The translations under genes were made by a program, and so were the position numbers. DNA of 64,000 nt from Octopus sinensis. Taxonomy: Eukaryota. Below, piece by piece: positions 20,350-64,000 of the stretch (its first letter is position 1; each line of letters begins with the position of its first letter). The stretch lies in the NCBI RefSeq assembly GCF_006345805.1, contig NW_021833454.1, positions 1-64,000 of the forward strand. The letters run 5' to 3'. The notes under the pieces are model-generated. The model had not been told where the DNA came from. It did no database searches and saw nothing but the letters and a program-made list of their open reading frames with translations.

Positions 20350-20386
20350 ATATGTATGTATGCAGGTATGTATGTATGTATGTATG

Positions 20387-20420
<34 letters not shown>

Positions 20421-21098: not shown

Positions 21099-21130
<32 letters not shown>

Positions 21131-27860: not shown

Positions 27861-28208
27861 TATATATATATATATACAGACACACACACACACATAATTT
27901 AGTAATTATTGGTTTTAACCTTGGGTATAAACCACTTAATATGACACTACTTAACAGATAAAGACGCGTAGTTTAGTAGTTAGGATGCTACACTCGCGTT
28001 TGGTAGTTCGTGGTTTCCATTCCCGGACCGGTCGAAACGTTTTCTTTCATGCTCTTAAAACACTTGTCGCGAAGACATAGATCTAACCCTTATATGTATA
28101 TATATATATATATGTGTGTGTGTATGTATGTATGTGTGTATGTATTATGTACGTACGTATGTATGTGTGTATGTATGTAGGTATGTACGTATGTATGTAT
28201 GCATATAT

Positions 28209-29270
28209 ATCAAAGAGGTCAAATTGTTGGTGCTCGTAAGGTAGGCGCTAGCTTACCGAGAACAGCTGAAATGTTTGGTGTATCAAGAAGTACTGTCTCG
28301 AAAGTAATGGCAGCCTTTAAGAAAGAAGGAAAAACTTCCTCGTGGAAACAAAACTCCGGAAGAAAACCAAAACTTTCAGATAGGAACCGTCGGACTCTTA
28401 CGTGGATTGTTTGAAAGGATCACTAAAGTTCAGCTCCCAAAATTACTGCAAAGTTAATGACCACCTTGAGAAGCCAGTTTCCACAAAAACTGTTTTCCGG
28501 ATTTCACGGGAGGGCTGCAATCAGAAAATCAGAAAATCACTACTTTCAAAAACAAACGTTGCACAGCATTTAGAGTGAAGCAAAAACCTACAGAACTTGT
28601 CCCTAGAGCAGTGGAAGAATATTATTTTCTCGGACGAGTCATCCTTTACCTTATTTCCGACCACAAGCCGAGTATATGTGTGAAGACAGCCAAAAGAAGC
28701 ATTTGGCCCAGACTGCCTTCTTCCAACTGTTAAACATAGAGTAGGATCTGTAATGATCAGTGGAAGTGTGTGCTATATCTTGGAAATCTCTTGGCCCAAT
28801 GGTTTCCCTTCATGGCAGAATTAATAGTCAAGACTATTTAAGCATCTTATCTGTTCAAATTCATCCTATGGTTGCGGAAGTGCATCCGGAGGGAGATGCA
28901 ATCTTTCAGGATGATAATACACCAATTCACACAGCTAAAGTTGTTACTGAATGACACGAGGAACATTCTAGTGAAGTTGCACATCTTATCTGGCCACCAC
29001 AGACCCCAGGTCTCAATATTATTGAACATTTATGGTGCATTTTAGAAAAACAAGTAAGGAGTCGATATCCTCCACCATCATCACTACCAGAACTGAAGAC
29101 TGTTTTTGCTAATGAATGGAGGAAGATTACTTTGGAAGCAATTCAAACTTTGTATGAGTCCATACCTCATAGAATTCAAGGTGTAATTACTGCCAAAGGC
29201 GGTCCTACCCCATATTAAAATTAATTTGATTGAAATTTTCAGGTGTTTCCATTATTTCATCCAACACCTG
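28209..29270 (+). mobile_element. Tc1-superfamily transposon, DD36E triad (Incomer-like), left end lost
   Basis: QRGQIVGAR, FSDESSF (D at 28633), FQDDNTP (D at 28913), WPPQTPGLNIIEHLW (E at 29024): 36 residues between D2 and E. GGPTPY* ends 29218. Right end ...CCAACACCTG|TA. Multiple stops and frameshifts. Confidence 0.9.
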
Positions 29271-34551: not shown

Positions 34552-35182
34552 ATATATGTATCAAATGAAATAAAGGAAAAACACGACACAAAGGATGTTG
34601 CGGTACATATGTTTCGAGCTTTATAGAACAACTTATTCTTACATCAATGCATAATCGACATAACAGATAGTTCAAAAGCCCTCTTCGGCCGCATGCAATT
34701 GCTATACCAAAGACTTGTATCACATTGTGGTGAAAGGTTTGAGAAAAAACATTTGGTATTGTTTATAAAGGTAGGTAAAACGAGTATCACTGGGAAAGTA
34801 TGTTTGTAAATCTTCATAGGCGTACATGGCATTATTAGACTCAGTATTCATTCTATATTGAGTGAGAAAGCGGCATAGACGATTTGTTTTGGAGTCTAAT
34901 AATACCATGTACGCCTATGAAGATTTACAAACATACTTTCCCAGTGATACTCGTTTTACCTACCTTTATAAACAATACCAAATGTTTTTTCTCAAACCTT
35001 TCACCACAATGTGATACAAGTCTTTGGTATAGCAATTGTATGTGGCAGAAGAGGGCTTTTGAACTATCTGTTATGTCGATTATGCATTGATGTAAGAATA
35101 AGTTGTTCTATAAAGCTCGAAACATATGTACCGCAACATCCTTTGTGTCGTGTTTTTCATTTATTTCATTTGATACATATAT
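34552..35182. mobile_element. Long fold-back inverted pair (about 291-bp arms, 49-nt spacer) of a Penelope-type repeat
   Basis: 34552-34842 is the reverse complement of 34892-35182 with few mismatches. Confidence 0.8.
34599..34693 (-). ncRNA. Type I hammerhead with long loop II (CCGAAGA core)
   Basis: TGCGG-CCGAAGA-GGGCTTT...AAAGCTC-GAAA-CATATG-TA-CCGCA. The mirrored copy at 35041-35135 has mutations in stem I and the core. Confidence 0.65.
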
Positions 35183-36295: not shown

Positions 36296-37134
36296 GTGAC
36301 GTTTAATGTATTCTTTGGATAGTTACCCCTACGCGATCTGGGAATAAGAAATTCCCACTTTTTATTAAAAAAGACAGAAAGTAATGCCTCATTTGCCAAG
36401 AAGTAGAAGCCGTAGAAAGACCCAGACTTATGACGTAAGCCATATCATTTCCAATTAGGAGAGAATGTCGGCGAAATATCATCTTCTTGAGAGAGAAGAT
36501 GGCTGGCAGAGAAATAAGTAATAATGATGAAGATATTGAGACCGATGGAAGGAAGAAATATTGGTTGAACTTAAAGATGGTGGTGGGTGGGTGGTGGGTG
36601 GGGGAAACAGCAATAAACTTTTAAATGAAAGCGACCAAATGTTGTTGGTTGGAACTAGGAAATAAAAATTTTTAGAAACCTGTTTTGTGAATTACAATCA
36701 GAAAGATTGAAGCAAGTAATACGTGTGTCTACAGACATACATGCATGCATATACACATACATACATACATACATACATACATACATACATACATACATAC
36801 ATACATACATACATACATCTTAGCGTCGAATACAGACGTGTTGGTATAGATGACCATTCATTCTCACGGATAATGAAAATGATCGCCTATAACTCTTGCC
36901 ACTAATACGGACCTGATGAAAAGAAAATGTTTATCTTCTTTCAGTAAATGCGAAGAAACAAACTTTTTGTAGAAAGATCGTAGCTGTAATCAGACAGTGA
37001 AATATATAGCACATAGTAAATTACTCTACACACACCTTGACGACGAAAGAACCAGGACGCGGCTAGCGAAGATCTATCGACGAACTATCGAAAAAAGTTC
37101 CAGTGGGCTTTCGAAATGAACCAAAACCTATACC

Positions 37135-37735
37135 TATTTCTTTACTACCCACAAGGGGCTAAACACAGAGGTAACAAACAAGGACAAACAAACGGATTAA
37201 GTCGATTACATCGACACCAGTGCGTAACTGCTACTTAATTTATCGACCCCGAAAGGATGAAAAGCAAAGTCGACCTCGGCGGAATTTGAACTCAGAACGT
37301 AGCGGCAGACGAAATACGTATTTCTTTACTACCCAAATGGGCTAAACACAGAGTTAACAAACAAGGATAGACAAGCGGATTAAGTCGATTACATCGACCC
37401 CAGTGCGTAACTGCTACTTAATTTATCGACCCTGAAAGGATGAAAGGTAAAGTCGACCTCGGCGGAATTTCAACTCAGAACGTAACGGCAGACGAAATAC
37501 CTATTTCTTTACTACTCACAAGGGGCTAAACACAGAGGTAACAAACTAGGACAGACAAACGGATTAAGTCGATTATATCGACCCCAGTGCGTAACTGGTA
37601 CTTAATTTATCGACCCCGAAAGGATGAAAAGTAAAGTCGACCTCGGCGGAATTTCAACTCAGAACGTAACGGCAGACGAAATACAGCTACGCATTTCGCC
37701 CGGCGTGTTAACGTTTCTGCCAGCTCGCCGCCTTT
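37135..37735 (-). mobile_element. SINE trimer (one head plus 3 x about 184-bp units) with 18-bp TSD
   Basis: Units start at 37131, 37315 and 37498. Head ends 37732. TGAAC(C/T)AAAACCTATACC at 37117-37134 and 37736-37753. Confidence 0.9.
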
Positions 37736-38334
37736 TGAACTAAAACCTATACCAGTTCTACAGAAGGGTTAAGGATGATCCTTCAACAGGCTGCATGAAA
37801 AAGCTCGAAGTGTATTGCGATGAGAAACTCGACATTCTCAATATTTTAAAAGAACAATTGCGTCATACACACGTATGTTTGTGTGTGTGTGTGTTTGCGT
37901 GTATGTGAGTGTGTGTGGTATGTGAGTGTGTGTATGTGTGCTTTTGTGTGTGGGGGTGGGTGTTTGTGTATGTGTGTGTTTGTGTGCGTGTTTGCGTCTG
38001 CGCGTACGTGCGTACAGGTATCAAGTACGATATTTCTAATGGTAAGAAATTGTGTTAAATTTTGGCGTATTTCCGAGGAGACGATTTCATTACTCGCTTT
38101 TTCGCGTGAAGGACTCGCTGGAGATCTTCAACACACTTCGGTCAATATTACTTTCCAATAAAAAAGAAGAAACAAGTATTTAAAGACTTTTATATTTCTT
38201 TTTTATGTTAGAAACATCTGCGACGTCTTAACCCACCACACACACACACCACCACCACCATCACCACCACACAATTGTAATCCAAGGACAACAAGTCAGT
38301 ACATGTCCTTCTAAACAGAAGCATATCTTTGTCC

Positions 38335-38659
38335 GTATGTATGTATGTATGTATGTATGTATGTATATATGCATGTATGTATGTATGTATGTATGTATGT
38401 ATGTAGGTGTGTATGTATGTATGTATGTATGTATGTATGTATGTATGTATATATGCATGTATGTATGTATGTATGTGTGTATGTATGTATGTATGTATGT
38501 ATGTGTGTATGTATGTATGTATGTATGCATGTATGTATGTATGTATGAATGTGTGTATGTATGTATGTATGTATGTATGTATGTATGTATGTATGTACGT
38601 GTGTATGTATGTATGTATGTATGTATGTATGTATATATGTATGTATGCATGCATGTATG

Positions 38660-38693
<34 letters not shown>

Positions 38694-39023
38694 TGTACGT
38701 GTGTATGTATGTATGTATGTATGTATGTATGTATATATGTATGTATGCATGCATGTATGTATATATGTATGTATGTATGTATGCATGTATGTATGTATGT
38801 ATGTATGTATGTATGTAGGTATGTATGTATGTATGTAGGTGTGTATGTATGTATGTATGTATGCATGCATGTATGTATATATGTATGTATGTATGCATGT
38901 ATTTATGTATGTATGTATGTATGTATGTATGCATGTATGTATGTATGTATGTATGTATGTATGTATGTATGTATGTATGCATGTATGTATGTATGTATGT
39001 ATATATGTATGTATGCATGCATG

Positions 39024-39054
<31 letters not shown>

Positions 39055-39118
39055 TGTATGTAATGTATGTATGTATGCATGCATGTATGTATGTATGTAA
39101 TGTATGTATGTATGTATT

Positions 39119-39157
<39 letters not shown>

Positions 39158-39171
39158 TGTATGTAGGTGTG

Positions 39172-39202
<31 letters not shown>

Positions 39203-39270
39203 TGTATGTAATGTATGTATGTATGCATGCATGTATGTATGTATGTATGTAATGTATGTATGTATGTATT

Positions 39271-39305
<35 letters not shown>

Positions 39306-39465
39306 TGTATGTAGGTGTGTATGTATGTATGTATGTAATGTATGTAATGTATGTATGTATGCATGCATGTATGTATGTATGTATGTAATGTATGTATGTA
39401 TGTATTTATATATGTATGTATGTATGTATGTATGTAATGTATGTAGGTGTGTATGTATGTATACA
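38335..39465. repeat. (TATG)n array with higher-order block duplications
   Basis: A block containing TAATG, GCATGCATG, TATTTATA and GTAGGTGT recurs three times in 39050-39455. Confidence 0.9.
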
Positions 39466-39477
39466 CACACACATATA

Positions 39478-39837
39478 TAGGGTGCGACGAGTAAATTGTC
39501 AGCATTTTATATTCTCAATTTCGCGCATGTGAATTGTTCATTTTTGAGGACATGTACTGAGAGTGATAAAAATCAAACATCCAGTCAACTTCATGGTGTT
39601 TCGAGTGATCGCTAGCGATGGCGACCTTATCCCTCCATTCATCTCCCCACGCAGCCTCAAACTAAATACGGAGGCCTACATCAAGTGCCTGGAGTGGGTA
39701 GTGTTGCCCTAGGTCAAGAGAGTGGCTGCTGGAAGACCCTATACTTGGCCACAGGACCCTGCACCATACCATACAAGCACGAGCACCCAGTCATGGCTGT
39801 TAAACAATTTCTGCGACCCATCACCTCTAACATCTGG
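39478..39837 (+). mobile_element. maT (DD37D-like) transposase fragment
   Basis: KHPVNFMVFRVIASDG..PPFI..LKLNTEAYIKCLE..VLP*VKRVAAGRPYTWPQDPAPYHTS..TQSWL. The third catalytic residue is missing, so the family call rests on motif similarity. Confidence 0.65.
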
Positions 39838-39956
39838 TAAATATATCTGTTAAAATGAGATGTCAGTGTTATTTTCATTTTAGCGTAATTTAGATTCGGC
39901 TCCATGGCGCTTTAAGTTTCGTGGACGCACAGAACTGAATAAAACTATAATTATTT

Positions 39957-40710
39957 TCTACTCTAGGCACGAGGCCCGAAATTTGGGGGGATGGGCCAGT
40001 CGATTAGATCGACCTCAGTACGCAACTGGTACTTAATTTATCGACCCCGAAAGGATGAAAGGCACAGTCGACCTTGGTGGAATTTGAACTTAGAACCTAA
40101 GGACAGACGAAATACTTATTTCTTTACTACCCACAAGGGGCTAAACACAGAGAGGACAAACAAGGACAGACAAACGGATTAAGTCAAATATATCGACCTC
40201 AGTGCGTAACTGGTACTTAATTTATCGACTCCGAAAGGATGAAATGTAAAGTCGACCTCGGCGGAATTTGAACTCAGTACGTAAAGACAGACGAAATACC
40301 TATTTCTTTACTACCCACAAGGGGCTAAACGCAGAGAGGACAAACAAGGACAGACAAACGGATTAAGTCAAATATATCGACCTCAGTGCGTAACTGGTAC
40401 TTAATTTATCGACTCCGAAAGGATGAAAGGTAAAGTCGACCTCGGCGGAATTTGAACTCAGTACGTAAAGACAGACGAAATACTTATTTCTTTACTACCC
40501 ACAAGAGGCTAAACACAAAGGGGACAAACAAGGACAGACATAGGTATTAAGTCGATTACATCGACCCCAGTGCGTAACTGGTACTTAATTTATCGACCCC
40601 GAAAGGATGAAAGGCAAAGTCGACCTCGGCGGAATTTGAACTCAGAACGTAACGACAGACGAAATACGGCTACGCATTTCGCCCGGCGTGCTAACATTTC
40701 TGCCAGCTCG
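39957..40710 (-). mobile_element. SINE multimer (head, 3 x 184-bp units, terminal unit with alternative tail)
   Basis: Unit junctions at 40113, 40297, 40481 and 40665 (period 184). Confidence 0.9.
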
Positions 40711-40794
40711 ATGCCTTGAATAAAACTATTATTAAATAATTTATGTAACCCCTACGAAATACGTTGAGTGCCGCTTCCTTTCGTTTGTTCACTC

Positions 40795-43123: not shown

Positions 43124-43492
43124 AGCAGGAGCGGCTGTGTGGTAAGTAGCTTGCTTACCAACCACATGGCTCTGGGTTCAGTCTCACTGCGTGGCACCTT
43201 GAGCAGGTGTCATACTATAGCCTCGGGTCGACCAAAGCCTCGTTCGTGGATTTGGTAGACGGAAACTGAAAGAAGCCCGTCATATGTGTGTGTTTGTCCA
43301 GCATCCCCAACCATCGCTTGACAACCGATGCTGGTGTGTTTACGTCTCCGTAAATTAGCGGTTTGGCAAAAGGGACCGATAGAATAAGTACTAGGCTTAC
43401 AAAGAATAAGTCCTGGGGTCGATTTGTTCGACTAATGGCAGTGCTCCAGCATGGCCGCAGTCAAATAAAAGACTAAAAGAATAAAAGAATAA
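43124..43492 (+). mobile_element. tRNA-derived SINE (near full length)
   Basis: Head GCGGCTGTGTGGTAAG...GGGTTCAGTC through tail CAGCATGGCCGCAGTCAAAT. Confidence 0.85.
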
Positions 43493-43717
43493 GGCGGTGA
43501 GGTGGCAGAATCGTTAGCACGCCGGACAAAATGCCTAGTGGTATTTCGTCCGTTTTAACGTTCTGAGTACAAATGCTGCCGGTGCCGACTTTGCTTTTAT
43601 TCTTTCTGGGTGGATAAAATAAGTACCGGTTGAGCAATGAGGTCAACGTAAAAGACTAAACTCCTTCCCTCAAAGTAGAAAGGAATGTAATAGATTTTAT
43701 TTTGTGCCTGCTGTCAG

Positions 43718-43767
<50 letters not shown>

Positions 43768-44043
43768 GAACGAGACAGTTTCTTGCCAGGTGCACGATTT
43801 CACCATTATTTACACAGTTGCTCAGGTATCAACAGTCAATTGGACACCAATATTGTCCTCCGTTCTACACATGATAACTCACACAGATAAATGATAAACA
43901 CAGCAACTGTGTGTAGCTTCAATGTACAGTTGTTTTTGTTTTTATCTTTAAAGACGACTATCATTTTTTTTTTTTAGCCAAAAAGGAAATCAGAGCCAAT
44001 AAGCCTTTTTTACGCGAGCATTGAAAGTGGTGGAAGATGAGGA

Positions 44044-44265
44044 GCTGGCAGAAACGTTACCACGTCGGGCGAAATGCTTAGCGGTATTTCGTCTGCGTTA
44101 CGTTCTGAGTTCAAATTCCGCCGAGGTCGACTTTGCCTTTCATCCTTTCGGGGTCGATAAATTAAGTACCAGTTACGCACTGGGGTCGATGTAATCGACT
44201 TAATACCTATGTCTGTCCTTGTTTGTCCCCTCTGTGTTTGGCCCCTTGTGGGTAGTAAAGAAATA
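44044..44265 (+). mobile_element. SINE monomer (multimer family) with 12-bp TSD
   Basis: GGAAGATGAGGA at 44032-44043 and 44266-44277. A box TGGCAGAAACGTT, B box GAGTTCAAATTCC, MetaSINE-like core GTCGACTTTGCCTTTCATCCTTTCGGGGTCG. Confidence 0.9.
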
Positions 44266-45871
44266 GGAAGATGAGGAAACCAGAAGGATTTCAGAAGCCT
44301 GACACCCGGCTTGGCTGTTTGTAGCAGAAGGACTCTGCAAAAGACGACCAAAGTCCCAGGTGATGGTGCCAAATCGGGCGTCGGAATAATTCTACCACCC
44401 GACAAGGATATAGCAGGATTTGAACTCAGAACGCAATGAACCGAAAAAATACTGTAAAGTATTCTATTGATGCTCCAACGGTTCTACCGGTTCGCCAACT
44501 GTTCGTGTTCGATACAAACACATATATATTCATAAACACACCAACACATAGACACATACATATACACACACAATGCATACATACGTGTCTACATATATCT
44601 ATGTGCTTATATGTACACACACACATATATATACATACATATATATATACATACATATATGCATGCATACACACACACATATATATACAGACAGATAAAT
44701 AGATAGATTAGATAGATAGACAGATAGATCGATCGATAGATAGACAGACAGATAGATAGGTATATAGATAGACAGACAAACAGATAGATAGATCGATAGA
44801 TAGACAGATAAATAGCTAGATAAATAGATTGATAGACAGACAGACAGACAGATAGATAGATCGACAGACAGATAGATAGATGTGTGAGTACACACACACA
44901 CACACACAGACATCTATATACATGCGCACAGTTACACATTTCAAAAAGCTGTTCTACCATCACCGGTTAGGGTTCCGTGCTTGATGCTGTTCTTTTACTG
45001 CCATTTGATAGAACGAATTCATTTTCATGATGGCATTTCGAAATTAACTCTCATCTTTTATTTAACAACTTAAAGCATTGGTGAGGATGAAGCATTTTTT
45101 CATTATTACGGGGGTTGTACGATTTAGAACAGGCGTTGTATTTGTTGCTAAAATGTACGGAGCAGGTCATACTAGACATTACTAATGCCATTATGTTTTA
45201 AATCCCATATGTATTTTGATAATGCAGCGCCATTTGTTTCGTCGAAAGCTTCAAATGTGGACTTGTAATTTAGACACTGGCTTTTCAAATTGCTCTAATA
45301 CATTCCAATATAGGATTTAAGAGATTTTTTTTCTCAGCTGGGACACTGTAGTTAGGTAGATTAGCGATTCGGCTTTGTATTGTTCGCAAAGTCATTGAAT
45401 TACCGGATGGTTTGGAGGGCCCAGCTGTTGACATCAATATGAGGTCACACGTTACCACACAAAACAACAACAACATAACACAAAATAGAAATACAAATTA
45501 ATTATAGGAAACAATACAGAGAAATCTGAAAGAGAACGGAATAAAGGAAAAAAGCTACAATTCCGTGGCAAAAGAAAATTGCTTTATTGAATCAAATGGA
45601 AAATGTATTTTCTTCAGACAAATCAAAATTCTTTTGCTGCACCCACACTTGTTTTCTTCTTTTCATACTAAGTCAGTAACTGAACTACAGCCATGCTGGA
45701 GCACCGCCTGCAAGAGTTTAGTCGATCAAATTGATCATGGTGCATGTTTTCGAAGTCCGGTACTTCGTCAGTCGTACTCTTTTACAGAACTGCTTGGTTG
45801 TGGGGATATAAACAATCCAACACCGGTTGTCAAAATACAGGACTGACACAAATACACACACAAATAGATAG

Positions 45872-49890: not shown

Positions 49891-51719
49891 ATATACGCAG
49901 TCGCATATACCCTGTCTTTATATATACAACGTCTTTGCAGGTGGAAAAACAGGTGAGATTAATCTGGTTAGAAATGCCGTGTTGGCATTTCACCAGTTTT
50001 CCCCGTAACAATCCGCGGCGATACTCTTTTTAAAGTCAATTTTACTAACAGTTTCACTAAACCAGAATTGACCGATTTGCGTAGATAACGCATTCTTAGC
50101 AGCTAGTTGGTTTAATAAACTACTGCAGCATTAACGATGTTTATTTCCATGTGTCTGACCATCTCTAAAAAGACAGAATGCGATTTCAGGGTGATTTAGC
50201 TGCTATGTCTTGCAAATCCAGTGCCAACATAGAGGCTGTCTTGTTGGTTCATAATAGCAGTGGTGGTCATGGTTGTGGCTGCTGTTGTTGTTGTTGTTGT
50301 TATTCCTGTTATTACTGTTGATATAGCTTTATTGCTATTGTTGTTGATACTGTTGTTGTAGCAATTGTTGCTGTTTTTGTGATTATTTTTGTTGTTGTTA
50401 TTGTTACTGTTGTTGTTGTTGTTGTTGTTGTTATTGTTGTACCAGAAAACTCTAATAAAGCCAATTTTTCAGAAAGTGTCATGAAATTAATGTTATTTTA
50501 GAATTAGCAAAGCTTTCATTCATTGTCTCTCTCTGTCTTACTTTCTTCTTTCTTTCTTTCTCTTTTTCTTTCTTTTTTTCTCTTTCTTTCATTAACTCAC
50601 CTTTCAATTCACCAATATTTCTCTACTTCAGCCCCATCCGTTTTCTCAAATGTACTCAGGCACACACACACACACACATGCTCACACGCCAACATACAAA
50701 TGTGTAATCACACACAACATACACACTAACACACAACCATATGCACAACAATCTACACGTCCACAAACACATTGTCCAACACACAGTCACAGCACGCAGG
50801 AACAAATACACACACTCACACGCATACACGCACACAGAGAAACACATGTTCACCAATCCGATACAACCACCACCACCACCACCACTACCACAGCCACCAC
50901 CACCGCCGCCGCGACCACCACTACCACCACAACCACCAATACCACCACCACCACCACCACCACCACCAAATAGGCAGCGAACTTGGCGGAATCGTTAGAA
51001 AGCTGTACAGAGTTCGCGGTATTTGTTCCAACTTTGCGATCTAAGTTCAAATCTAGCAGAAGTCAATTTCTCGTTCAACCTTTCGCGGATGGCGAATAAA
51101 ATATCTGGCAATTCCCGTAATGGTCTACTTGGATGGTAGACTCACTCCACCACCTACATGAACACCGCCACCTGGCGACCTTTTCAGTACCTTTAATGGA
51201 GTCCACTCTGAATAAAGCATTCAGGCCATATCTCCAGTCAAAGGATACCAGTGTTGTTGCTGCTGCTGCTGTTGTTTTTGTTGTTGGTGGTGATGGTGGT
51301 GGCGGTGTTGGTAGTGGTGTTGGTTGATAATAGTTTAATAGTAGCACCGGTTTTGGTGATGCTGCTGTTTGTTGTTCTTCCTGATTTAGCGATATCATAA
51401 ATACTTTATTTTCTTGAAAATAGATAGCAGAGATTTCATATTATGTCAACAAGTCGAGATGAGCTATAGTTATTTCCGCATTTATGAGTGTGGACTGGTT
51501 TACGGTATCATCTTTAGGAACCGGAGTAGTTGACATTTAGTCCTTCTTTAAGTTCAAGGTTCAAATTCCGCCAAGGTCGACTTTGCCTCTCATCCTTTCG
51601 GGGTCGATAAAGTAAGTACCAGCTGAACACTGGTGTTGATGTAATTGACCCACCAAAATTTCAGGACTTGGGCCTATTGTAGAAATGATTATAAGTATTT
51701 TTCTGTCATTTATAAAATA

Positions 51720-52840: not shown

Positions 52841-53819
52841 TCTTATCTAGTTTTGCTTTTTGATAAGAGTCTGATGAAACAGTGCGGTGAAAGTGCTGAA
52901 TGTAGGTGAAACAATAAGTAAGGTGTAATGTTTTACTGTAGGTGGTGGTTGTGGTGGCGGCGGTGGTGGTGTAGGTGATACAATGCAGAGGGTGACTGTA
53001 GGCGGAGTAAAGTAGATGCTGCCAAAATCTTGTTAAATTGACAGAATATAAAAAAGACAACAAAAGTAAAAAACCTAATGACTTCAGATTTTTTTTTCTT
53101 TCTTGGCAATGTGGAAACATTTAACCTAATTTTCTTTCGTGTTTGTTGCTGTTGTTGTTGCTGTTGTTGCTGCTGTTCTTGTTGCTCTGTTTATTATTAT
53201 TATTTTTTGTATTTTGTGGTTTTTATTGTTACCGTGGTACTACTGTCGTTGCTGCTTTTGTTGTTGTTGTTGTTGTGTCTGATACTTTTGTGCTTTTCTT
53301 ATGTTGTTGTGTCTGTTGTTTTTGTTTTATTGTTGTTGTTCTTGTTCGTGTTGTCACTGTCGTTGTTGCTGTTGTTGTTTGTTTTATTGTTGTTTTTGTT
53401 GATTACTCTGCTGTTTTCGTTTATTTTGTTGTTGTTGTTGTTGTCGCAAAAGAAGACAAGACACAACACACACCAATTTGTTTAATGTTTCATGGATAAA
53501 TCCTGATGTTGTGGCATTCACACCTTTCCCTAAACTATTTCCCACGCAAGAGAAACGAAACTTCCTCGATGGTGGATCGAACCCAGGTTGCGGATTCAGC
53601 TTGCCAATATCTAACTTCACAACTTATACACTCAGTTCTAATAAATGATGCTATTGTTAGCCTTATTTCTATTTTTCTAAGGCAGAGAGCTGGCAGAACA
53701 GTTAACGCGTCGGAGAATGTTACTAACAAGCATTTCTTCTTGTTCTGAGTTCAAATCCCGTCGAAGTCGGCTTTACCTTTGTTGCTTCTGGATTTTTTTT
53801 TTTTGATCGATACAATAAA

Positions 53820-54225
53820 TACCTATTTCTTTACTACCCACAAGGGGCTAAACACAGAGACAAACAAACGGATTAAGTCGATCATATTGACTCCAGTGCG
53901 TAACTGGTATTTATTTAATCGATCCCGAAAGGATGAAAGGCAAAGTCAACCTCGGCGGAATTTGAACTCAGAACGTAGCAGCAGACAAAATATCTATTTC
54001 TTTACTACCCACAAGGGGCTAAACACAGAGAGGACGAACAAGGACAGACAAACGGATTAAGTCGATTATATCGACCCCAGTGCGTAACTGGTATTTATTT
54101 AATCGACCCCGAAACGATGAAAGGCAAAGTCGACCTCGGCGGAATTTGAACTCAGAACGTAGCAGCAGACAAAATACCGCTTGGCATTTCGCCCGGCGTG
54201 CTAACGTTTCTGCCAGCTCGCCGCC
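53820..54225 (-). mobile_element. SINE dimer (head plus 184-bp and 171-bp units)
   Basis: Junctions at 53820, 53991 and 54175. Same family as 37135-37735. Confidence 0.85.
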
Positions 54226-54703
54226 CTGTTGAGGGTTGGGGTCAATGTAATCGACTTACTCCCTTCCCCCTTAACATCGCTGGGTTTGTACCTAAATTTG
54301 GAAGTTATTATTTTGCAAAGGAAAGTGAGGGTGGAGAAAGAGGTGCAGTGCTCGAGTAAATTTATTGAAAGGTGGGTCAAAGCTGCGAAAAAGGCAAGAA
54401 TGAATGGTACTGCTCTAAGAATGGGTCTGTGAATCGGAGAAAAGGAAATATATATAAATTTATATATATTTTGATGGCAAAATTCTTGTAGAAAATGTCT
54501 TGCGTTATTTATTCCGTTGCGTCATGTTCTGATTTCTCCGAGGTCCACTTCCATTTTCCTTCATCCAGATAAAATAAAATACTCTTCATGTATTAGAGGC
54601 AATGCGAACGATGAAGGCCCCTCACCTCAAAATTCTTGCCTACATCTGAAAGTATCCATACTGTTGCTCATGTTGTGATGGTGAGTTGTCAGAGTTGCTT
54701 GAG

Positions 54704-55665: not shown

Positions 55666-58600
55666 AATATTATATATATATTATATATATATATATACAT
55701 ATACATATGCATACACACATGCTTATATGCTAACATACATACATACATACATAAATAAATACACACATATATACATAACATGCATATGTATACGTATCCA
55801 CAACACAGATATGCGTATATCAATGCATATGTCCGTATGCATGCATGTTTTTATGTGTGTGTATCTGATTGTGCATGTATGTATTTACAGCTATATATAA
55901 TCAAACACACACACACTCACTTTCACACACACTTGTATATAAAATCATTATTAACACAGACACACGGAGATGAAAATACATTGACATACACATCTAAACA
56001 CACATCTAAACACACAGACCACTCGTTAGTGCCCAATGTCCAGCACCACCACCGCTGCCACCACTACTGCCCCCACTACTACCAACACCACTTCTACTAC
56101 TACTTCTTCCACCACCACCTCCATCACTGCAACTACCACCACCACCACCATCATCACCACTACTACTACTACTACTACTAGCCCACACCAAACTGACCAG
56201 TGTCAATCAACCCTAATCCTCCAACAAGATCCAACCTGTCTGTCCAGTGTAAATATTTGTCGTCAACTATTGATGGCTTGGTCTTAGTAGTTGCCCTTAT
56301 TAGCTGAGAGGTCAGTCTATTTATGCCGACAAGAATCATAAACTATAGGCTCTCAACCATACCCTACTGTTGTTCAAACTATAGGCTATAATTCATCCCC
56401 TGCTACAGTTGGAAATATAGGCTATCGCCATACTCGCTGCTATTAAAACTATAAGTGAAAGGTCATCTTATGCTCAGGCTATCTACTACCAATGTCTCAG
56501 CTAGGGGCCCTCTTCTGCTGTTGTCAACACTAAAGAATACATACCATTTTCTACAGACAGAAATTTCTGCTGTTTTTGAAATTATATTCTCTGTTGTTGT
56601 TCAAGAGAGAAGCCATGTCATTCTCTCTCGTTGTTCATCCTATTAGCCATGGACTATATTAGCTGTTGTCAAAATGATAGACTATTGGTCATTGCATGCC
56701 ATTGTTAAGCCTACAGACCGTGAATCATTCCCCGCTTTTGTCCTGCCTACTGCTATCGAACTTTCCCTGCTCTTATTCAGGCAATACGTTATGGGTCCTC
56801 TTGTTGAAACTATAAACTAAATCCAGTTTCCTGTTGTTTTTCAGTTCCTAGCCTATGAAGGCCACTGTCTGATGTCCTCCATAACATAGACCAGTGGTAC
56901 TTGGTTTGAGCAGTAGCAACAACCTTGGGCGAGTTGTGAACTAACAAGATCGCGTTATGTGACTCCTAGATGTTTAGAGAAGTCAAAGAAAATATTTCAA
57001 ACAAATACAAAACTTCAGTTTTAAACACATTTTCAAATAATAAAGAAAAAATGTGAGAGAGAAAAACCTTTGTTAGGGTTAAAGTATGAAAAAAAGATAT
57101 TGAGTTATCAGTGAGTAGAAAAGAGTATGAGAAGTGTCGACAAGGTCCGTGTGGTTTCCTTATGTAAGTCCTCGCCTTGCTTTTAGTAATTGCAATAAAA
57201 ATTTAATGGAATGGGGCAACAGTGCAGTCCATGAAAACATTTAAAAAAAACAACAGGAAGTAAGAAAGGACATGCCGGATGAGACAGAAGAAAATTATGA
57301 AGGAAACACGGACCCTAAATATCAGCTCAAAATTAGTTGCTCTTTCATAAAAATAATCTGTCTTTCTGTCTGTCTGTCTCTATACATGCCTCTCTTTGTT
57401 TACATCTCTCTCTCTTTCTCCCCCACCACCTCTCCGCAAAACATGGGATGGGTGCGGGTGGCATTTTTACAATGCTAGTCTGTTGCAAATGGTAGTGGTG
57501 AACGACAAAAGGTTGAGAACCACCGCTATAGGATATTGGTAAATCTCTGTTCTTCAAACGGTGTGCAACGACGCAGCTGGAGAGTGTGCCGCCGCCTAGG
57601 GCAGCCCTTGAGTTCTCCGTCACCCCTGCAAACCTAAAATGCCACTTAGGCGGACCTACCTCATCGCTCCACCACCAAACTTTGGTCACGCTACTAATGC
57701 TATGAGCCACTCATTGCAACACTTCATAGAGCAAATGTTGGGTTAATCCTTTCTGTTAATATTCCAGCCTAAACACGATTCTTCGATGTCTTCCACGACA
57801 TAAGCAATAAAAAGTTCCTTGGCTGTTGGTCATACTGCCAGCTATGAAGCAATCCTAGATATTCTTCAGACTCTAAACCGGATTTAGACATGGTGTACCA
57901 CGAAACTATGTAAGGCCTGGAAACCCCTTGTTTAAAAATATATATTCCCTGTCTGGATTTAGATTGCAAGACTCTTGATGTGGACTTGTGTGTTGAAAGA
58001 GATTTTGTTCTATCTTGAGAGGGTCATTATGCCAATAATGAACACACGCACTGGTCCTGTCTCACTTCTATTTTTATTAGTCAACTAGTTAACTATTTAA
58101 ACAATTAACTTATTGATTAATCATTCGGTTAATCAATCAGTCAGTTAACTTTGTCAAAGTCGTCGACGAACAGACAGACCAGAAGCTGACCTGAAGTAGA
58201 GACGGTATGTGATTATTGAGGTCGCGAATTTGCGCAGCTGCAATTGCGACGTGTCTAATACGCTTGTGTGTCTTTTGTGCCATTAGAAAACGCTTGGTTG
58301 GAATGATATCAGTGATATATTATAGGTGTATAGCATAACTATGAAACAACAACAGTGATATAACTCAGACGTGCAAGACGGCGAGCTGGCAAAATGGTTA
58401 TCACGCCGACAAAATGCTTCGCGGTATTTCATGTCTTAACGCTCTGAGTTCAAACTCTGCCGAAGTCGATTTTGTTTTTCAACCCTTTCAGAGTCGACCA
58501 ACACGCCCCACCACCCCGAAATTTCTGGCATTGTGCCAAAACTTGAAATCCATATTACTTTTCAATAAGGCGTTGGCGAAGTAGAATCGGTAGCATGCCG

Positions 58601-59370
58601 GACAAAATGCTTAGCCAAGGTCGACTTTGCCTTTCATTCTTTCGGTGTTAATAAAATAAGTACCCGCTGAGCAAACTGGGGTCGATTCAATCAACCTGCA
58701 CCCCCGTCTCTCGGAATAGCTGTCCTTGTGCTAACATTTGAAACCGATATTTCTCCGATGTGTATTGTGGCCATGAAAGTATAATCGGTTTTTGAAGTGG
58801 GTTTTTTTTTTTATAATAGAAAGCAGTTTATAACAAATAAAAAGTAAATACAAAAGTACGAAAAAACTATTGAAAATAAGATTAAGAAATTAATCTTAAT
58901 TAACTTCATTTATATTTATAATTAAAATCATTCTCTGACCTAATTTGTGCAGACATTCTGTTATATAGGTTTACGCATGGCTGTTTGATTAGGAATTATA
59001 GTTCGTAAAGATGAAGTCTTAGGATCGACCCCACTCGGCGGAACATGGAGCAATTTTCTTGTTTTATGGTTTCGGATTAACCAAAACTTGTACGTATCTT
59101 ATGCATGCGTGTATAAGTGTCTATGCACGTACGTATGTGTGTGTGTCTGTGTGTGAAAGGATAGATGGCTGGATGCATATCGTTATATATATATATACCC
59201 TGGGCCAGGAATACTAAAACAAAAGATAAGTCCTCCGAAAAGGAGAACCAAATTTCACCACGGCCGCTACTTCAAACAGACACTCACTCTGACGGAAAAA
59301 AGGAAAAAAATTCTTTCGTGCAAATCTGACCCTGATACATACGATACAGCTAAGGGTCAAACCCGATTCT

Positions 59371-59913
59371 GATTGGTCAACAAGTTGATGACGTCTAGCT
59401 CTGCTAGAATGGACAGGATACAAACAGGGGACAGTCATTAGTCAGAATATTGATGACGTCCTTTTCTGCTTGAATAGTCACCTAACAAGTACAGACAGGG
59501 GGAAGATCTAATGTAGCTATAAGTCGTGATTGGGCAGAATCTGGATGACGTCCCGCTCTGCTTGACTAACGACGAAGCGACTGGTCAAAACAGGAAACAA
59601 ACAAGAGGCAGATATATGCAGCGAGTGGTCAAAATAATGATGACGTCCCGTTCTATTTGACTAACGAAGCGACTGGTCAAAACAGGAAACAAACAAGAGG
59701 GAGTTATAATGCAGCGATTGGTCAAAATAATGATGACGTCCCGTTCTACTTGATTAAAGCTACCTAACGAAACGATTGGTCAAAACATTGATGACGTCAC
59801 GCTACGCTAGATTGACCACCTAACAGGCATTATAAAACGAGCATTTCACAAAAACTCACTAGAACCACCCAGCGAACTTCCACCATGGGTCATCACAATT
59901 GCTTAAGGTAAAA
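59371..59913 (+). promoter_or_regulatory. Array of six CCAAT(ATTGG)+CRE modules followed by TATA, Inr, Kozak ATG and splice donor
   Basis: GATTGGTCAA-N5-TGATGACGTC-type units at 59371, 59436, 59528, 59623, 59716 and 59774. TATAAAA 59831-59837, TCACT 59856-59860, CCACCATGG (ATG 59885), AAG|GTAAAA at 59907/59908. Confidence 0.55.
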
Positions 59914-60294
59914 ATGAATCCTCGCTCTTTCGGAAACATCAATCTTCTGTATTGACCGCTTTCCAACACTTTGATCGTTTTTGTATTGAATACGTATCGC
60001 CACCGTGGGCCACTGCATCGAACACTTTGAACATATACTTCAAACTATATATCAAATATACATGAACTATATATCAACTATACATGAACTCTAAGATGTC
60101 TGACTCCGTTGTGTATTATAAATGAATTTCTTGTGTTTGACGGCATGAGCTGTCTTTTTTTATATATAACTTTTTTTGATAAGGTTCATTTCAGGAACTG
60201 AAACATGTTATAATGTATATATAAAAATTAAAAATTGTATAATACAGCAGCATTTTCGAACTTCATTTTTTACAAATATATATATATATATATA

Positions 60295-60357
<63 letters not shown>

Positions 60358-62286
60358 GTGTGTATGTATGTATGTATGCATGTATGTATGTATGTATGTA
60401 TGTTGCTAAGTTGTGGAGTTATGTCTGACACCCGTTGTCATTCGTGGGTCGGATCCAGCCATAAGTTGAGTCCCTTGTGAAAACTGTCACTCCGCCATTT
60501 TGTAGCCTGAAAGGGCAGGCAGCTTTTATCTGTTGGGTGGCCTTGGCGAAAGAGGTGGTATGGTGGACCAGTTTGAAACGGCTGAAGACAGACACCTTCC
60601 CCTTTGCTCATGACCTCATCAATTAAGGATGGAGAAAGAAGTGCTGTTTCCCATCAAATTCGTTGAACGGTGGATGAGAGTGACAAACGTGGCCCAAGAG
60701 AATGAACTTATTCTCAGTAAGCACTTGTAGATTGAAAGATGATAGGAAAAAAAGGCACTCGTTTTAGTGGTCAGGGTGACCGTGGTTTTGTGGAGTTCCC
60801 ACAAATAGCCTTCGAGATCATCCCTTTTTTGGTAAATTAGTCTATATTGTCCTCGCATGTCCTTTGTGTTTTCGTCATTTCTTGATGGTTAATTACGAAA
60901 GTATTATTTTAAGATTGCTACAATAGTTAAAACGTTGAAAGGTTAAAGCCGTTCATGTTACCGTTTCAAGCTTCGCCCTTCAATTTTTCCGGAGTGGATT
61001 GAATAAAGTTCCAATCAAAATATCGCGTCTATAGTATTCTTTTCTACTCGAGGCACAAGGCCCGAAATTTTGGGGGTGGGTGCCAGTCGATTAGATCGAC
61101 CCTAGTACGCAACTGGTATTTAATTTAACAACCCCCGAAAGGATGAAAGGCAAAGTTGACCTCGGCGGAATTTGAACTCAGAACGTAAAGACAGATGAAA
61201 TACCGCTATCACCATCATCATCATCATCATCATTATTATTAAGACTGCGAGCTGGTAGAGTTGTTAGCATGCCGGGCAAATGTTTAGCGACATTTCGCCC
61301 GTCGTTACTTTCTGAGCTCAAAATTCCGCCCAGGTCAACTTTGCCTTTCGGGGTCGATAAAATAAGAAGCAGATGAGCAACGGGGACGATGTAATCGACT
61401 TACCCTGCTCCCCGGAACTACTGGCCTTGTGCCAAAATTGGAAACCATCGTCGCCGTCGTCATCGTCGTTGTTTTTGTATCCAGCTGGAGACTACAAGTC
61501 ATCGATTCAGTCACAATATTGCTTTAAGACTTCCACAAAATAATTACGAGACCAAACTAATCGACCGACCGCCATGACTGAAGGATAAGCTCAAACAATA
61601 ATCCAGCCGATGTTTTCTTTTCTAAGTACTATTTACGTTGACGCCAGTTGTGAAAGCTGTGCTGTAAGTGTGGCGTGGTGTGTTGTGGTGGTAATTTGGC
61701 GATGCGGGTTCGGCTCAGAGTTCATCGTTTAATCCGGGGGGAAGAGACATACAGCAACTGACACTCCTTACATACGTTCTCGGGTAGCAGAGTCGGGTGG
61801 GATCTTTTAGCTTGGACTTGCAGAAGTTTATTTTTGGAGGCAACATGTGAATATGTTCCTGGAGAGGAATTTCACTGACAGGGGTGAGGATTAGTGTGGA
61901 GAGAGGTGGGGTGTAAATTAAGTGGTTCAAAAGAGCGAGTGAGGGTCGTTGCCTTGGCGAATGGGCGTTTCGCTCATAATCGCAAGGACGTGGTTTCGAC
62001 TCCCTGACTGGATGGCAGCGTTGTGTTCTTGGGCAAGACACTTCTTTTCACGTTACTTAGCAATCACTTCGACATCTGATTTGTAGTCGACCGTGCACCT
62101 GCACAGGTAATGTCGATCAAATGGAGGAGCCGAGCTAAGGTACAGAACAAACAATTGATCACAATAAACAAACCGTCTGCGCAGGTTTTCGGCAAGAGTT
62201 TGAAGAACCCTCACCTGTCGTCAGCGATACGAGAGTACACAAAACAGCGAGTGTACTGAGGGTATTGGGGTTATTTATTTATTTAG

Positions 62287-62518
62287 GGCTGCGAGCTGGC
62301 AGAAACGCTAGCACGCCGGGCGAAATGCGTAGCCGTATTTCGTCTGCCGTTACGTTCTGAGTTCAAATTCCGCCGAGGTCGACTTTGCCTTTCATCCTTT
62401 CGAGGTCGATAAATTAAGTACCAGTTACGCACTGGGGTCGATATAATCGACTTAATCCGTTTGCCTGTCCTTGTTTGTCCCCCTCTGTGTTTAGCCCCTT
62501 GTGGGTAGTAAAGAAATA
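62287..62518 (+). mobile_element. SINE monomer (multimer family) with 16-bp TSD
   Basis: GGTATTGGGGTTATTT at 62261-62276 and 62519-62534. Confidence 0.9.
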
Positions 62519-62699
62519 GGTATTGGGGTTATTTCTCTTGATTATTGTTTTTTAGATTTTAAGTATCGCTAAAATGAATATTTTTAAATTTCTAATTGCA
62601 GTGAGTTTGATATGCAGAACACTCACAAAGGTACTTTTCTCAGCCATACTGTGTGAGCAAGCGTGTGCGTGTGTGGTGTAACATAATACACATTTGTTG

Positions 62700-62753
<54 letters not shown>

Positions 62754-62944
62754 TATATATATACATATATGTAGTATATAATACATACATTGTGTATGTA
62801 TGTTTTTATTTTTGTTTTTCTTTGATATTTGTTATTGGTCTTCTATAATAATGAAGCTGTATCCCTTAATTTATTGCTTTTGCATACAAATGCCGAGAAG
62901 AAATCTTGCGGAACATGCGTTGTTTTAATGAGATACATCTTGTA

Positions 62945-63050
62945 ATCACCTGAGGAGACACATCTACACCGACGGATACACCTACTCCAGATGTTCAGTA
63001 CCCCACTCGTGAGAATTCGATGCTGGATGGGTCGAAACAATTGTAGTGAT
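62945..63050 (+). ncRNA. Canonical type I hammerhead ribozyme
   Basis: ATCAC-CTGAGGA-GAC.CATC...GATG.GTC-GAAA-CAATTG-TA-GTGAT: all core nucleotides present, three stems, GUA triplet (cleavage after 63045). AATAAA follows at 63052. Confidence 0.8.
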
Positions 63051-63328
63051 CAATAAACTTTCTCGTATCTTCCATCTTCCGTCTCACTCATTAATCAAAT
63101 ATAGATAGGGAGTAGGTAGGTAGGTAGATAGATAGACAGACAGACAGACAGATACAAACATACGTACATATTATATATATACATTCATACATACATATAT
63201 ACGTATACAAGCTCATTCTTTACACATTTTGTATATGCCTAAAATCTATATAAGGCTGGAGTAAAGATAGAACGACCGTTGTGCTAATGGCGCCTATTAA
63301 GGGAGCAACAGCTGTCCACAATCGTCCT

Positions 63329-63850
63329 TTTGACTTGACTTGAGACAGCATTCACCCGGGGTGGGTTGAGCTGGCTTCATTCATCCTCAATGCTGCATCT
63401 CTCACAAACGCCGACCAGACCTGGCGATTTGAGGCTAACGACCGCGTGATCTCCAACCACTCCTTATTCCAGCAGCGAAAGCCATAGATATGGGGGCCTA
63501 GGTTGGGTTCCAGATCAGCCTTGACTGTCATCAGCCAGGTTTTTCGTTGTCCACCACATCGTTTTCCTCCAACCCTGAAGGGGAGCTGGGGCAATTGCTT
63601 CGTAGATGAATTCTCCTGGTTGACGACGGAGGGCATGACCCAACCAACGCAGACGTCTCGTTAGGATGACTTGTCGGAGGGAGGTGATTCTGCACTGGTG
63701 TCGCACCGAATTGTTGGAGACAAAGTGATGCCAGCGGACACGAAGGATGCGGCGTAGACAGAGGTGATGGAAGGATTCTAGTCACTTAATATCTTCCACC
63801 CTCATTGGCCATGACTCGCTGCCGTGTATCTTCGTCCTCGTGTCTCCCGA
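63329..63850 (-). mobile_element. RTE-clade LINE 3' end with (CAAGT)n tail
   Basis: GSESWPMRVED..LESFHHLCLRRIL, RRLRWLGHALRR, GGQRKTWLMTVKADLE, NRQVWSAFVRD. Tail CTCAAGTCAAGTCAA. Confidence 0.9.
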
Positions 63851-64000
63851 ATTACACAATCTTTTTTAATGATAAGTCATTTCTGAATAATACTTGATTC
63901 CTGATACAATTTTCCCCCCTCACCAGAGTCGGCTGGAATAATAAATCCATTGGGTATTTCTTTATCTTCTCCCAACGTGAAGATAATTTCAGTAAATTAA

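What the first reader, a model, noticed from the sequence alone, without database searches (positions are those of the whole stretch)
59371..59913. Tandemly amplified CCAAT+CRE enhancer array leading into a complete core promoter and first mini-exon
Seen: six modules keep an identical 12-nt spacing between ATTGG and TGACGTC although the spacer bases vary. Two ETS-like CAGGAAAC sites (59591, 59683) and a 93-95-bp internal duplication are present. These are followed by TATAAAA, an Inr-like TCACT 27 nt later, CCACCATGG, MGHHNCL and an AAG|GTAAAA donor. Established: NF-Y binds CCAAT and CREB/ATF binds TGACGTCA. Inference: a strongly cAMP/activity-inducible promoter, belonging either to a host gene or to a mobile element.
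Basis: partly seen in the sequence, partly recalled or inferred. Interest (0 to 1): 0.72.

Follow-up and report, generated by a model that had tools for sequence, protein, structure and literature searches.

The report
Tandem CRE/CCAAT array upstream of TATA
A 460-base stretch of an invertebrate-like genome repeats one small two-site control element six times just upstream of a TATA box, so it looks like an ordinary but unusually reinforced signal-inducible gene promoter whose gene lies outside the window.

Summary
Six modules, (G)ATTGG-N12-TGACGTC, lie at 59371-59799. They belong to a decayed tandem array with a unit of about 93 bp; the two youngest copies are 90% alike. TATAAAA, the only CCACCATGG in the window and an AAG|GTAAAA donor follow. 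The 9-nt core GATGACGTC is invariant in all six units, although the units are only 58-75% alike (one pair 92%). Column permutation gives P about 0.003. The CCAAT box is intact in only four modules.

Read on the minus strand, each module is a bZIP site 12 nt 5' of CCAAT. That is the published geometry of NF-Y partner sites. One eukaryote-like metagenome contig carries a single copy of the same 28-nt module next to TATA-like boxes.

The array is unique in the 64 kb. I found no TIRs, no LTR-type ends above chance, no transposon or viral ORFs, no coding homology within about 2-4 kb on either side and no Rfam match.

Best reading: a host Pol II promoter or proximal enhancer built by tandem duplication of an NF-Y/bZIP composite element. 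Its target gene is not in the window. Transcription, splicing of the 7-codon mini-exon, cAMP specificity and the ETS sites are unproven. It is a new member of a known kind, of modest interest.

The parts
59363..59825 (+). Whole degenerate tandem array: six units of 58-95 nt, ancestral unit about 93 nt
   Evidence: the repeat finder families D1/D2, TRF, MAFFT alignment of units. No copy elsewhere in the window.
59371..59395 (+). Module A1: GATTGG-N12-TGACGTC. On the minus strand this reads GACGTCA-N12-CCAATCAG, with good NF-Y flanks.
59436..59460 (+). Module A2: the CCAAT box is degenerate (ATTAG); the CRE core is intact
59528..59552 (+). Module A3: ATTGG intact (weaker flanks); the CRE core is intact
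59623..59647 (+). Module A4: the CCAAT box is degenerate (AGTGG); the CRE core is intact
59716..59740 (+). Module A5: ATTGG and the CRE core are intact; 92% identical to A4 over the ungapped columns
59774..59799 (+). Module A6: ATTGG plus the only full palindromic CRE, TGACGTCA (59792-59799), 32 nt upstream of the TATA box
59544..59757 (+). Youngest tandem duplication: period 93, 2.3 copies, 90% matches
   Evidence: TRF
59579..59603 (+). Half-module B1: GACTGGTCAAAAC followed by AGGAAAC (the ETS-like site at 59591). It has no CRE and its CCAAT is broken (CCAGT on the minus strand).
   Evidence: (family D3)
59671..59695 (+). Half-module B2, the duplicate of B1 (ETS-like site at 59683)
59831..59837 (+). 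TATAAAA box
   Evidence: It is one of 14 on the + strand in 64 kb, so the chance of one within 60 nt after the last CRE is about 0.013.
59856..59862 (+). Predicted start zone: the Inr-like TCACT, and an A at 59861, lie 27-30 nt after the first T of the TATA box
   Evidence: Read from the sequence. The match to Inr consensus is only partial. Not verified.
59880..59888 (+). CCACCATGG. It holds the first ATG after the TATA box and is unique in the window.
59858..59907 (+). Hypothetical 50-nt first exon: 27-nt leader, then ATG and 7 codons (MGHHNCL) plus 2 bases. If unspliced it ends in a stop after 8 codons.
   Evidence: translation. No second exon was found in 59908-64000.
59905..59913 (+). Candidate splice donor AAG|GTAAAA
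   Evidence: AAGGTAAA occurs 5 times on the + strand of the window.

Best explanation
The region is the promoter-proximal control region of a host RNA polymerase II transcription unit that points rightwards.

A segment of about 93 bp was duplicated in tandem several times. It carries a composite element: a bZIP (CRE/ATF-type) site, GATGACGTC(A), 12 bp 5' of an NF-Y CCAAT box, read on the minus strand. The duplications gave six bZIP sites and four usable NF-Y sites within 430 bp. The last module lies 32 bp upstream of a TATA box.

Inferred mechanism: NF-Y keeps the region open and helps bZIP dimers (CREB/ATF/Jun class) to bind side by side at a fixed distance. The multiplied sites, together with the TATA box, then give a steep signal-dependent response (cAMP/Ca2+ or stress kinases). 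Transcription would start near 59858-59862. A short first exon would be spliced from 59907/59908 to exons beyond the window.

Shown: the anatomy, the selective conservation of the bZIP core, the geometry, and uniqueness within the window.

Inferred: factor identity, the transcription start, splicing, inducibility and the target gene.
For: - Six co-oriented modules are far above chance. All six + strand TGACGTC of the 64 kb lie here.
- GATGACGTC is a run of 9 invariant columns among units that are 58-75% alike (one pair 92%). Column permutation gives P = 0.0027. The core contains a CpG, in a window whose CpG o/e is 0.79.
- All indels between units fall outside the module.
- Geometry: the bZIP site lies 12 nt 5' of CCAAT. 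In human ChIP-seq data, TRE-type bZIP sites lie 10/12 bp upstream of NF-Y-bound CCAAT boxes and E-boxes lie 10-12 bp 5' of them; FOS, ATF1/7, JUN and CREM are NF-Y partners (PMC7793273). The same group treats such distances as spacer lengths, with steric limits below 10 and loss of cooperation above 12 (bioRxiv 10.64898/2026.02.16.706105).
- CRE plus a proximal TATA box is the architecture of activity-induced CREB/CRTC targets (PMC5740062).
- TATAAAA, the first ATG in the unique CCACCATGG and a donor follow in the right order and at plausible distances.
- A eukaryote-like contig, L002, carries one copy of the same 28-nt module (26/26 with one mismatch to A6). It shares no other similarity with the window, and TATA-like boxes lie on both sides of the module.
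- There are no signs of a mobile element: no other copy in 64 kb, no TIRs, TG..CA+TSD pairs at chance level, and no TE or viral domains or homologs nearby.
Against: - No transcript, chromatin or binding data could be consulted.
- No second exon, coding homology or Pfam domain lies within about 2-4 kb on either side, so the served gene is unknown and the mini-exon is only a model. Unspliced, it codes for 8 residues.
- The Inr match is partial, and there is no DPE.
- The region is not a CpG island.
- Two of six CCAAT boxes and both half-modules are broken, so NF-Y cannot be essential in every unit.
- The permutation test ignores the relatedness of the copies.
- The single outside hit, L002, is within what a 22-nt pattern could give by chance in a collection of this size (my estimate is 0.05-0.5 expected hits).
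- Copy number in the rest of the genome is unknown.
Confidence: 0.5

Rival explanations
1. Neutral minisatellite. A 93-bp unit that happened to contain CRE-like and CCAAT-like words was amplified by replication slippage or unequal exchange. The motifs are passengers, and the nearby TATA, ATG and GT words are coincidence.
For: The structure is a head-to-tail repeat in a window crowded with micro- and minisatellites. Constant spacing follows from duplication alone. Two CCAAT boxes have decayed. No gene is in sight. It is not a CpG island.
Against: The 9-nt bZIP core is invariant while the flanking columns average about one change each (P about 0.003), and gene conversion would homogenise whole units, not 9 nt. 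The oldest units are only about 58-69% alike, so the array is old and yet has kept all six cores, each with a mutable CpG. The same composite occurs in an unrelated contig. The order and distances of TATA, ATG and donor are each rare in the window.
Confidence: 0.17
2. A promoter carried by a mobile or virus-like element, for example a solo LTR or the regulatory end of a decayed element. Its repeated CRE units would resemble the repeated CRE-bearing enhancer units known from some retroviral LTRs and herpesviral enhancers (my own knowledge).
For: Tandem enhancer repeats followed by a TATA box and a short leader are typical of LTR U3/R regions. The window is rich in transposon debris (mariner remnants, SINEs, a LINE tail). 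The region is flanked by SINE copies.
Against: There is no second copy or partner LTR in 64 kb. TG..CA ends with 5-6-bp duplications are no more frequent than in shuffles (2 observed against 1.7 expected). There are no TIRs. No gag/pol, transposase or other homologs lie in the flanking 2-4 kb on either side. One viral-contig hit is at the chance level, and there is no plasmid similarity.
Confidence: 0.12
3. A real regulatory element, but not a coding first exon. It could be a distal or alternative enhancer/promoter giving a non-coding or enhancer RNA, or a leader exon whose ATG is a short upstream ORF. Or it could act on the minus strand, or on a gene tens of kb away.
For: The ORF is 8 codons if unspliced. 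No downstream exon was found. The NF-Y boxes are inverted relative to the TATA box. In L002 the same module has a perfect TATAAAA on the opposite side.
Against: The only canonical TATA box lies on the + side at a proper distance. There is none within 150 nt on the minus side. CCACCATGG is unique in the window.
Confidence: 0.2

Closest known systems
CRE/TATA-class inducible promoters (c-fos, Nr4a1, Nr4a2, Dusp1, Ptgs2 type; PMC5740062). The ICER internal promoter of CREM, with four clustered CREs and a short specific first exon, is a further example (my own knowledge).
   Same: CRE-type sites lie within about 60-470 nt of a TATA box, all in one orientation. The nearest is a full palindrome about 60 nt from the predicted start. 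There is a short first exon.
   Different: This array has six sites made by tandem duplication of a unit of about 93 bp, more than in the natural examples I know. The factor, the inducibility and the gene are unknown, and no CREB/CREM-like exons are in the window.
Stereo-aligned NF-Y composite elements: a TRE/bZIP site, an E-box or a TALE 'DECA' site 10-12 bp 5' of CCAAT (PMC7793273; bioRxiv 10.64898/2026.02.16.706105)
   Same: The partner site lies 5' of CCAAT on the CCAAT strand with a 12-bp spacer. There are good RRCCAATSR-type flanks in three or four modules.
   Different: The partner here is an 8-bp CRE-type site rather than a 7-bp TRE. The composite is multimerised. Two copies have lost the CCAAT but kept the bZIP core, so the bZIP site is the more constrained half.
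ER stress response elements: ERSE (CCAAT-N9-CCACG) and ERSE-II (ATTGG-N-CCACG), which are NF-Y plus ATF6/XBP1 (my own knowledge)
   Same: An NF-Y box and an ACGT-core bZIP site lie at a fixed distance and are repeated several times in chaperone promoters.
   Different: Neither pattern is present. Here the bZIP site lies on the other side of the CCAAT, the spacer is 12 nt, and the core is ACGTC, not CCACG.
Repeated CRE-bearing enhancer units of viral regulatory regions (deltaretroviral 21-bp repeats, betaherpesviral immediate-early enhancer repeats) and synthetic multimerised CRE reporters (my own knowledge; named only)
   Same: Several CRE cores in direct repeats lie upstream of a TATA box.
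   Different: The unit length and sequence are unrelated as far as could be tested. There is no viral or vector similarity and no element structure around the array.

Membership tests
CRE/TATA-class inducible Pol II promoter | Full or half CRE within a few hundred bp upstream of the start site | tested here: met
   Six TGACGTC sites lie at 59389-59798, one of them the full TGACGTCA at 59792. Distances are relative to a predicted start only.
CRE/TATA-class inducible Pol II promoter | TATA box about 25-35 nt upstream of a mapped transcription start | tested here: inconclusive
   TATAAAA is at 59831-59837. The start site is not mapped, and the Inr match (TCACT) is partial.
CRE/TATA-class inducible Pol II promoter | CREB/CRTC occupancy and signal-dependent transcription | not testable with these tools
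   No expression or binding data are available.
NF-Y composite element with a stereo-aligned partner | CCAAT pentamer with NF-Y-type flanks | tested here: met
   The box is intact in A1, A3, A5 and A6 (GACCAATCAG, GACCAATCGC, GACCAATCGT, CCCCAATCAC). It is broken in A2 and A4 and in both half-modules.
NF-Y composite element with a stereo-aligned partner | Partner site 10-12 bp 5' of CCAAT on the CCAAT strand | tested here: met
   The spacer is exactly 12 nt in all six modules. The published range is in PMC7793273.
NF-Y composite element with a stereo-aligned partner | Co-occupancy or cooperative binding of NF-Y and the partner | not testable with these tools
   This needs occupancy data.
ERSE / ERSE-II / UPRE | CCAAT-N9-CCACG, ATTGG-N-CCACG or TGACGTGG | tested here: not met
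   The array has no match. The only TGACGTGR in the window is at 42179.
LTR of a retroelement (paired or solo) | Second LTR or dispersed copies | tested here: not met
   There is no other copy in the 64-kb window. Genome-wide copy number is not testable here.
LTR of a retroelement (paired or solo) | TG...CA termini flanked by a 4-6-bp target-site duplication | tested here: inconclusive
   Two candidate pairs have a duplication of at least 5 bp, against 1.7 +/- 1.3 in shuffles.
LTR of a retroelement (paired or solo) | Adjacent internal region (gag/pol) | tested here: not met
   No Pfam domains and no homologs were found in the flanking stop-free segments.
DNA transposon / MITE | Terminal inverted repeats | tested here: not met
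   Only microsatellite palindromes occur in 58740-61030.
Minisatellite (structural class only) | Head-to-tail copies of a 10-100-nt unit | tested here: met
   TRF gives period 93 with 2.3 young copies. There are six units in all, with spacings of 65/92/95/93/58.

The most novel reading that the evidence does not exclude
CRE-N12-CCAAT is a deeply conserved, fixed-geometry composite element of invertebrate promoters. Here a lineage-specific tandem amplification has turned it into a six-fold 'super-inducible' promoter. That promoter would drive an unannotated immediate-early-type transcript, activity- or stress-induced, with a tiny first coding exon.
Probability: 0.12. Interest if true: 0.5.

Novelty: new member of a known kind. 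Interest (0 to 1): 0.3.

Why it matters
If transcribed, this would be a natural example of promoter strengthening by tandem duplication of a whole two-factor module. It comes with built-in evolutionary evidence for which half of the module is indispensable: the bZIP core is kept in 6 of 6 units and the CCAAT in 4 of 6. It would also be a compact natural inducible promoter from a poorly studied invertebrate genome.

It would extend the 10-12-bp NF-Y partner rule, established in human ChIP-seq data, to a distant animal lineage.

It does not open a new kind of biology. The principles (CRE plus TATA, NF-Y stereo-alignment, enhancer multimerisation) are textbook.

Tried and rejected
- Mobile element: self-BLAST of 58800-60300 and 56000-64000 against the window found no copies apart from SSRs and the flanking SINEs. 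There are no TIRs. LTR-type termini with TSD are at the chance level.
- Viral or vector origin: a viral-contig pattern scan gave one hit at the chance level (L001). There was no plasmid similarity.
- Known RNA genes: no Rfam family and no tRNA in the window.
- Neighbouring gene: stop-free segments in 56-64 kb have no significant Pfam match. An 800-residue query of the main flanking segments, with X at the joins, found nothing at E<=0.01 among 5.8 billion proteins.
- ICER-like idea (an internal promoter of a CREB/CREM gene): no pKID or bZIP basic-region motifs in any frame of the window.
- ERSE/UPRE: absent.
- Extending the window: ORFs of the window are not on record in the protein or contig collections.
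- Identifying the species through a mariner fragment gave only unnamed or horizontally spread relatives. The SINE and accession strings were not found in papers. The host therefore stays unidentified. My impression from the SINE and SSR content is a cephalopod or decapod; this was not tested.
- Published promoter sequences: module strings found only chance primer matches.
- CpG island: not one. The o/e is 1.04 against 0.79 for the window, and the count is unremarkable.
- A second isolated GATGACGTC at 7753 (-) has no CCAAT or TATA partner.
- The L002 paralog contig L007 lacks the module, so no footprinting was possible.

Full report
**1. What is there**

The window is AT-rich (37% GC) and crowded with microsatellites, SINE-like copies and decayed mariner and LINE fragments. 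It is plainly a eukaryotic, invertebrate-like genome. I could not identify the species with the tools.

Between 59363 and 59825 lie six co-oriented modules of the form (G)ATTGG-N12-TGACGTC. They start at 59371, 59436, 59528, 59623, 59716 and 59774. Four match the pattern exactly and two have one mismatch, both in the CCAAT half (ATTAG, AGTGG). Shuffles give 0.26 matches for the whole window. Every + strand TGACGTC of the 64 kb lies in this array.

The modules are the conserved cores of a decayed tandem repeat:
- TRF finds a 93-nt period with 2.3 copies at 90% identity (59544-59757).
- The older units are 58-75% alike. The unit lengths are 65, 92, 95, 93 and 58 nt.
- Each long unit also holds a half-module, GACTGGTCAAAAC, followed by AGGAAAC (59579, 59671).

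**2. Is any of it constrained?**

In the alignment of the six units, the only long invariant block is GATGACGTC: nine consecutive columns without a change, while the other ungapped columns average about one change each. Permuting columns gives a run this long with P = 0.0027. The test ignores the relatedness of the copies. However, homogenisation by gene conversion would act on whole units, not on 9 nt. The block also contains a CpG, in a window with CpG o/e of 0.79.

All length differences between units lie outside the 41-49-nt core. That is the only sense in which the 'constant spacing' is more than a by-product of duplication.

The CCAAT half is less protected. It is intact, with good NF-Y-type flanks, in A1, A5 and A6, intact with weaker flanks in A3, and broken in A2, A4 and both half-modules.

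**3. Geometry**

Read on the minus strand, every module is GACGTCA-N12-CCAAT, that is, a bZIP site 12 bp 5' of the CCAAT. ENCODE ChIP-seq analysis of human NF-Y sites reports TRE-type bZIP matrices 10/12 bp upstream of CCAAT and E-boxes 10-12 bp 5' of CCAAT. It names FOS, ATF1/7, JUN and CREM as NF-Y partners (PMC7793273). The same group treats these distances as spacer lengths, with clashes below about 10 bp and loss of cooperation beyond 12 bp in the TALE/NF-Y case (bioRxiv 10.64898/2026.02.16.706105). The module therefore fits a known class of stereo-aligned NF-Y composite elements. It is not an ERSE, ERSE-II or UPRE.

The conserved extension (T)GATGACGTC matches the left half of the HT-SELEX motifs printed for BATF3 (TGATGACGTCATCA) and ATF4 (GGATGACGTCATCC) (PMC5449588 and PMC9930257). 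The site therefore cannot be assigned to CREB, or to cAMP, specifically.

**4. Core promoter and 'mini-exon'**

- The last module carries the only full palindrome, TGACGTCA (59792-59799). It lies 32 nt upstream of TATAAAA (59831-59837).
- An Inr-like TCACT (A at 59858) and an A at 59861 lie 27-30 nt after the first T of the TATA box.
- The first ATG after the TATA box sits in CCACCATGG (59880-59888), which is unique in the window.
- The frame reads MGHHNCL and meets AAG|GTAAAA at 59905-59913. Unspliced, it stops after 8 codons.
- Frequencies in the window: TATAAAA 14 times, RCCATGG 3 times and AAGGTAAA 5 times per + strand. Each is individually unlikely at its position, but all were chosen post hoc.
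- CRE plus a proximal TATA box is the architecture of activity-induced CREB/CRTC target promoters (PMC5740062).
- The 3' ends of units A2-A4 also carry TATA-like words (CTATAAG, GATATATG, GTTATAATG). The duplicated unit may therefore once have been a whole small promoter. The alignment is ambiguous on this point.

**5. What it serves**

I could not find the gene. The remaining 4 kb downstream hold SINE copies, microsatellites and a LINE tail on the other strand. None of the stop-free segments within about 2-4 kb on either side that I tested has a significant Pfam hit. The main ones, joined into an 800-residue query, found no homolog at E<=0.01. No Rfam family or tRNA is present. An ICER-like internal promoter of a CREB/CREM gene is not supported, because no pKID or bZIP motifs occur in any frame. 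If the donor is used, the first intron is longer than 4 kb and the gene body lies beyond the window.

**6. Mobile element or host?**

- The array and its 2.2-kb surroundings (58750-61000) are unique in the window. The flanks are old SINE copies at 58371-58745 and 61029-61446.
- There are no terminal inverted repeats.
- TG...CA ends with 5-6-bp duplications occur as often as in shuffles.
- No transposase, gag/pol or viral domain is adjacent.
- A viral-contig scan gave one chance-level hit, and there is no plasmid or vector similarity.
- Genome-wide copy number, the real test, could not be run.

**7. Outside evidence**

- The contig is eukaryote-like: 33.6% GC, with a C1q-domain exon (PF00386).
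- It shares with the window only the module, TCTGATTGGTCAAAACAATGATGACGTCA. This matches A6 at 25 of 26 positions and includes flanking bases that the pattern did not demand.
- TATA-like boxes lie on both sides of the module.
- By my estimate, a pattern of this information content would give 0.05-0.5 chance hits in a collection of this size. The hit is therefore suggestive of a shared functional composite, not proof.
- A paralogous contig lacks the module.

**8. Verdict**

The best reading (about 0.5) is a host promoter or proximal enhancer made by tandem duplication of an NF-Y/bZIP composite element upstream of a TATA box. Its transcript and signal are still to be shown.

Rivals:
- A real regulatory element whose ATG or exon model is wrong (0.2).
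- A neutral minisatellite (0.17).
- A promoter of a decayed mobile element (0.12).

In kind, it is a new member of well-known classes. The tidy internal evidence for constraint and the six-fold multimerisation make it a pleasant but not surprising example. Interest: 0.3.

Noticed in passing
window 22839-23290 and 23448-23899: A perfect (100%) 452-nt inverted repeat with a 157-nt loop. It could be a foldback element or an assembly artefact.
   Followed up: no
window 34552-34842 and 34892-35182: A 291-nt inverted repeat, 98% complementary, 49 nt apart.
   Followed up: no
window 17800-22100: About 4 kb of compound 4/8/12-nt microsatellite (TATG/TGTA type) with GC skew of about 0.70. Similar arrays lie at about 38200-39500 and about 60276-60403.
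   Followed up: no
window 12810-13700 (+), 14881-15990 (+), 28181-29215 (+): Three decayed Tc1/mariner-type transposase remnants (Pfam Transposase_1, HTH_48, DDE_3). Each is spread over more than one reading frame. The closest database relatives are unnamed or from crustaceans, fishes and lizards, as expected for horizontally spread mariners.
   Followed up: partly
window 62278-62524, with copies at 37127-37732, 39945-40724, 43490-43660, 44042-44267, 51532-51691, 53818-54227, 58371-58745 and 61029-61446: A SINE-like family of about 190-250 nt with at least 12 copies in 64 kb, 75-94% alike, some in tandem. It reminded me of cephalopod tRNA-derived SINEs, but ARAGORN and Rfam find nothing and I could not verify the family.
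   Followed up: partly
window 63355-63781 (-): The C-terminal tail of a non-LTR retrotransposon ORF, split over two reading frames. It has no significant Pfam match and no exact record in the collections.
   Followed up: partly
L002 3141-3169 (same as L006; also L005 at about 3040-3068): A eukaryote-like metagenome contig (GCA_013332915.1) has one copy of the CCAAT/CRE module with the perfect 12-nt palindrome GATGACGTCATC. The module lies about 1 kb downstream of a C1q-domain exon, with TATAAAA on the minus side and ATATAAAG on the plus side.
   Followed up: partly
window 59510-59520, 59604-59614, 59697-59707: TATA-like words (CTATAAG, GATATATG, GTTATAATG) lie at the 3' ends of units A2-A4. 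This suggests that the duplicated unit may once have included its own TATA box, but the alignment is ambiguous.
   Followed up: partly
window 5800-8300: The GC- and CpG-richest stretch of the window (GC up to 0.55, 28-30 CpG per 400 nt), with an isolated GATGACGTC at 7753 (-). One stop-free segment (5837-6196, minus strand) has no Pfam hit. This could be a real CpG-rich promoter or exon.
   Followed up: partly
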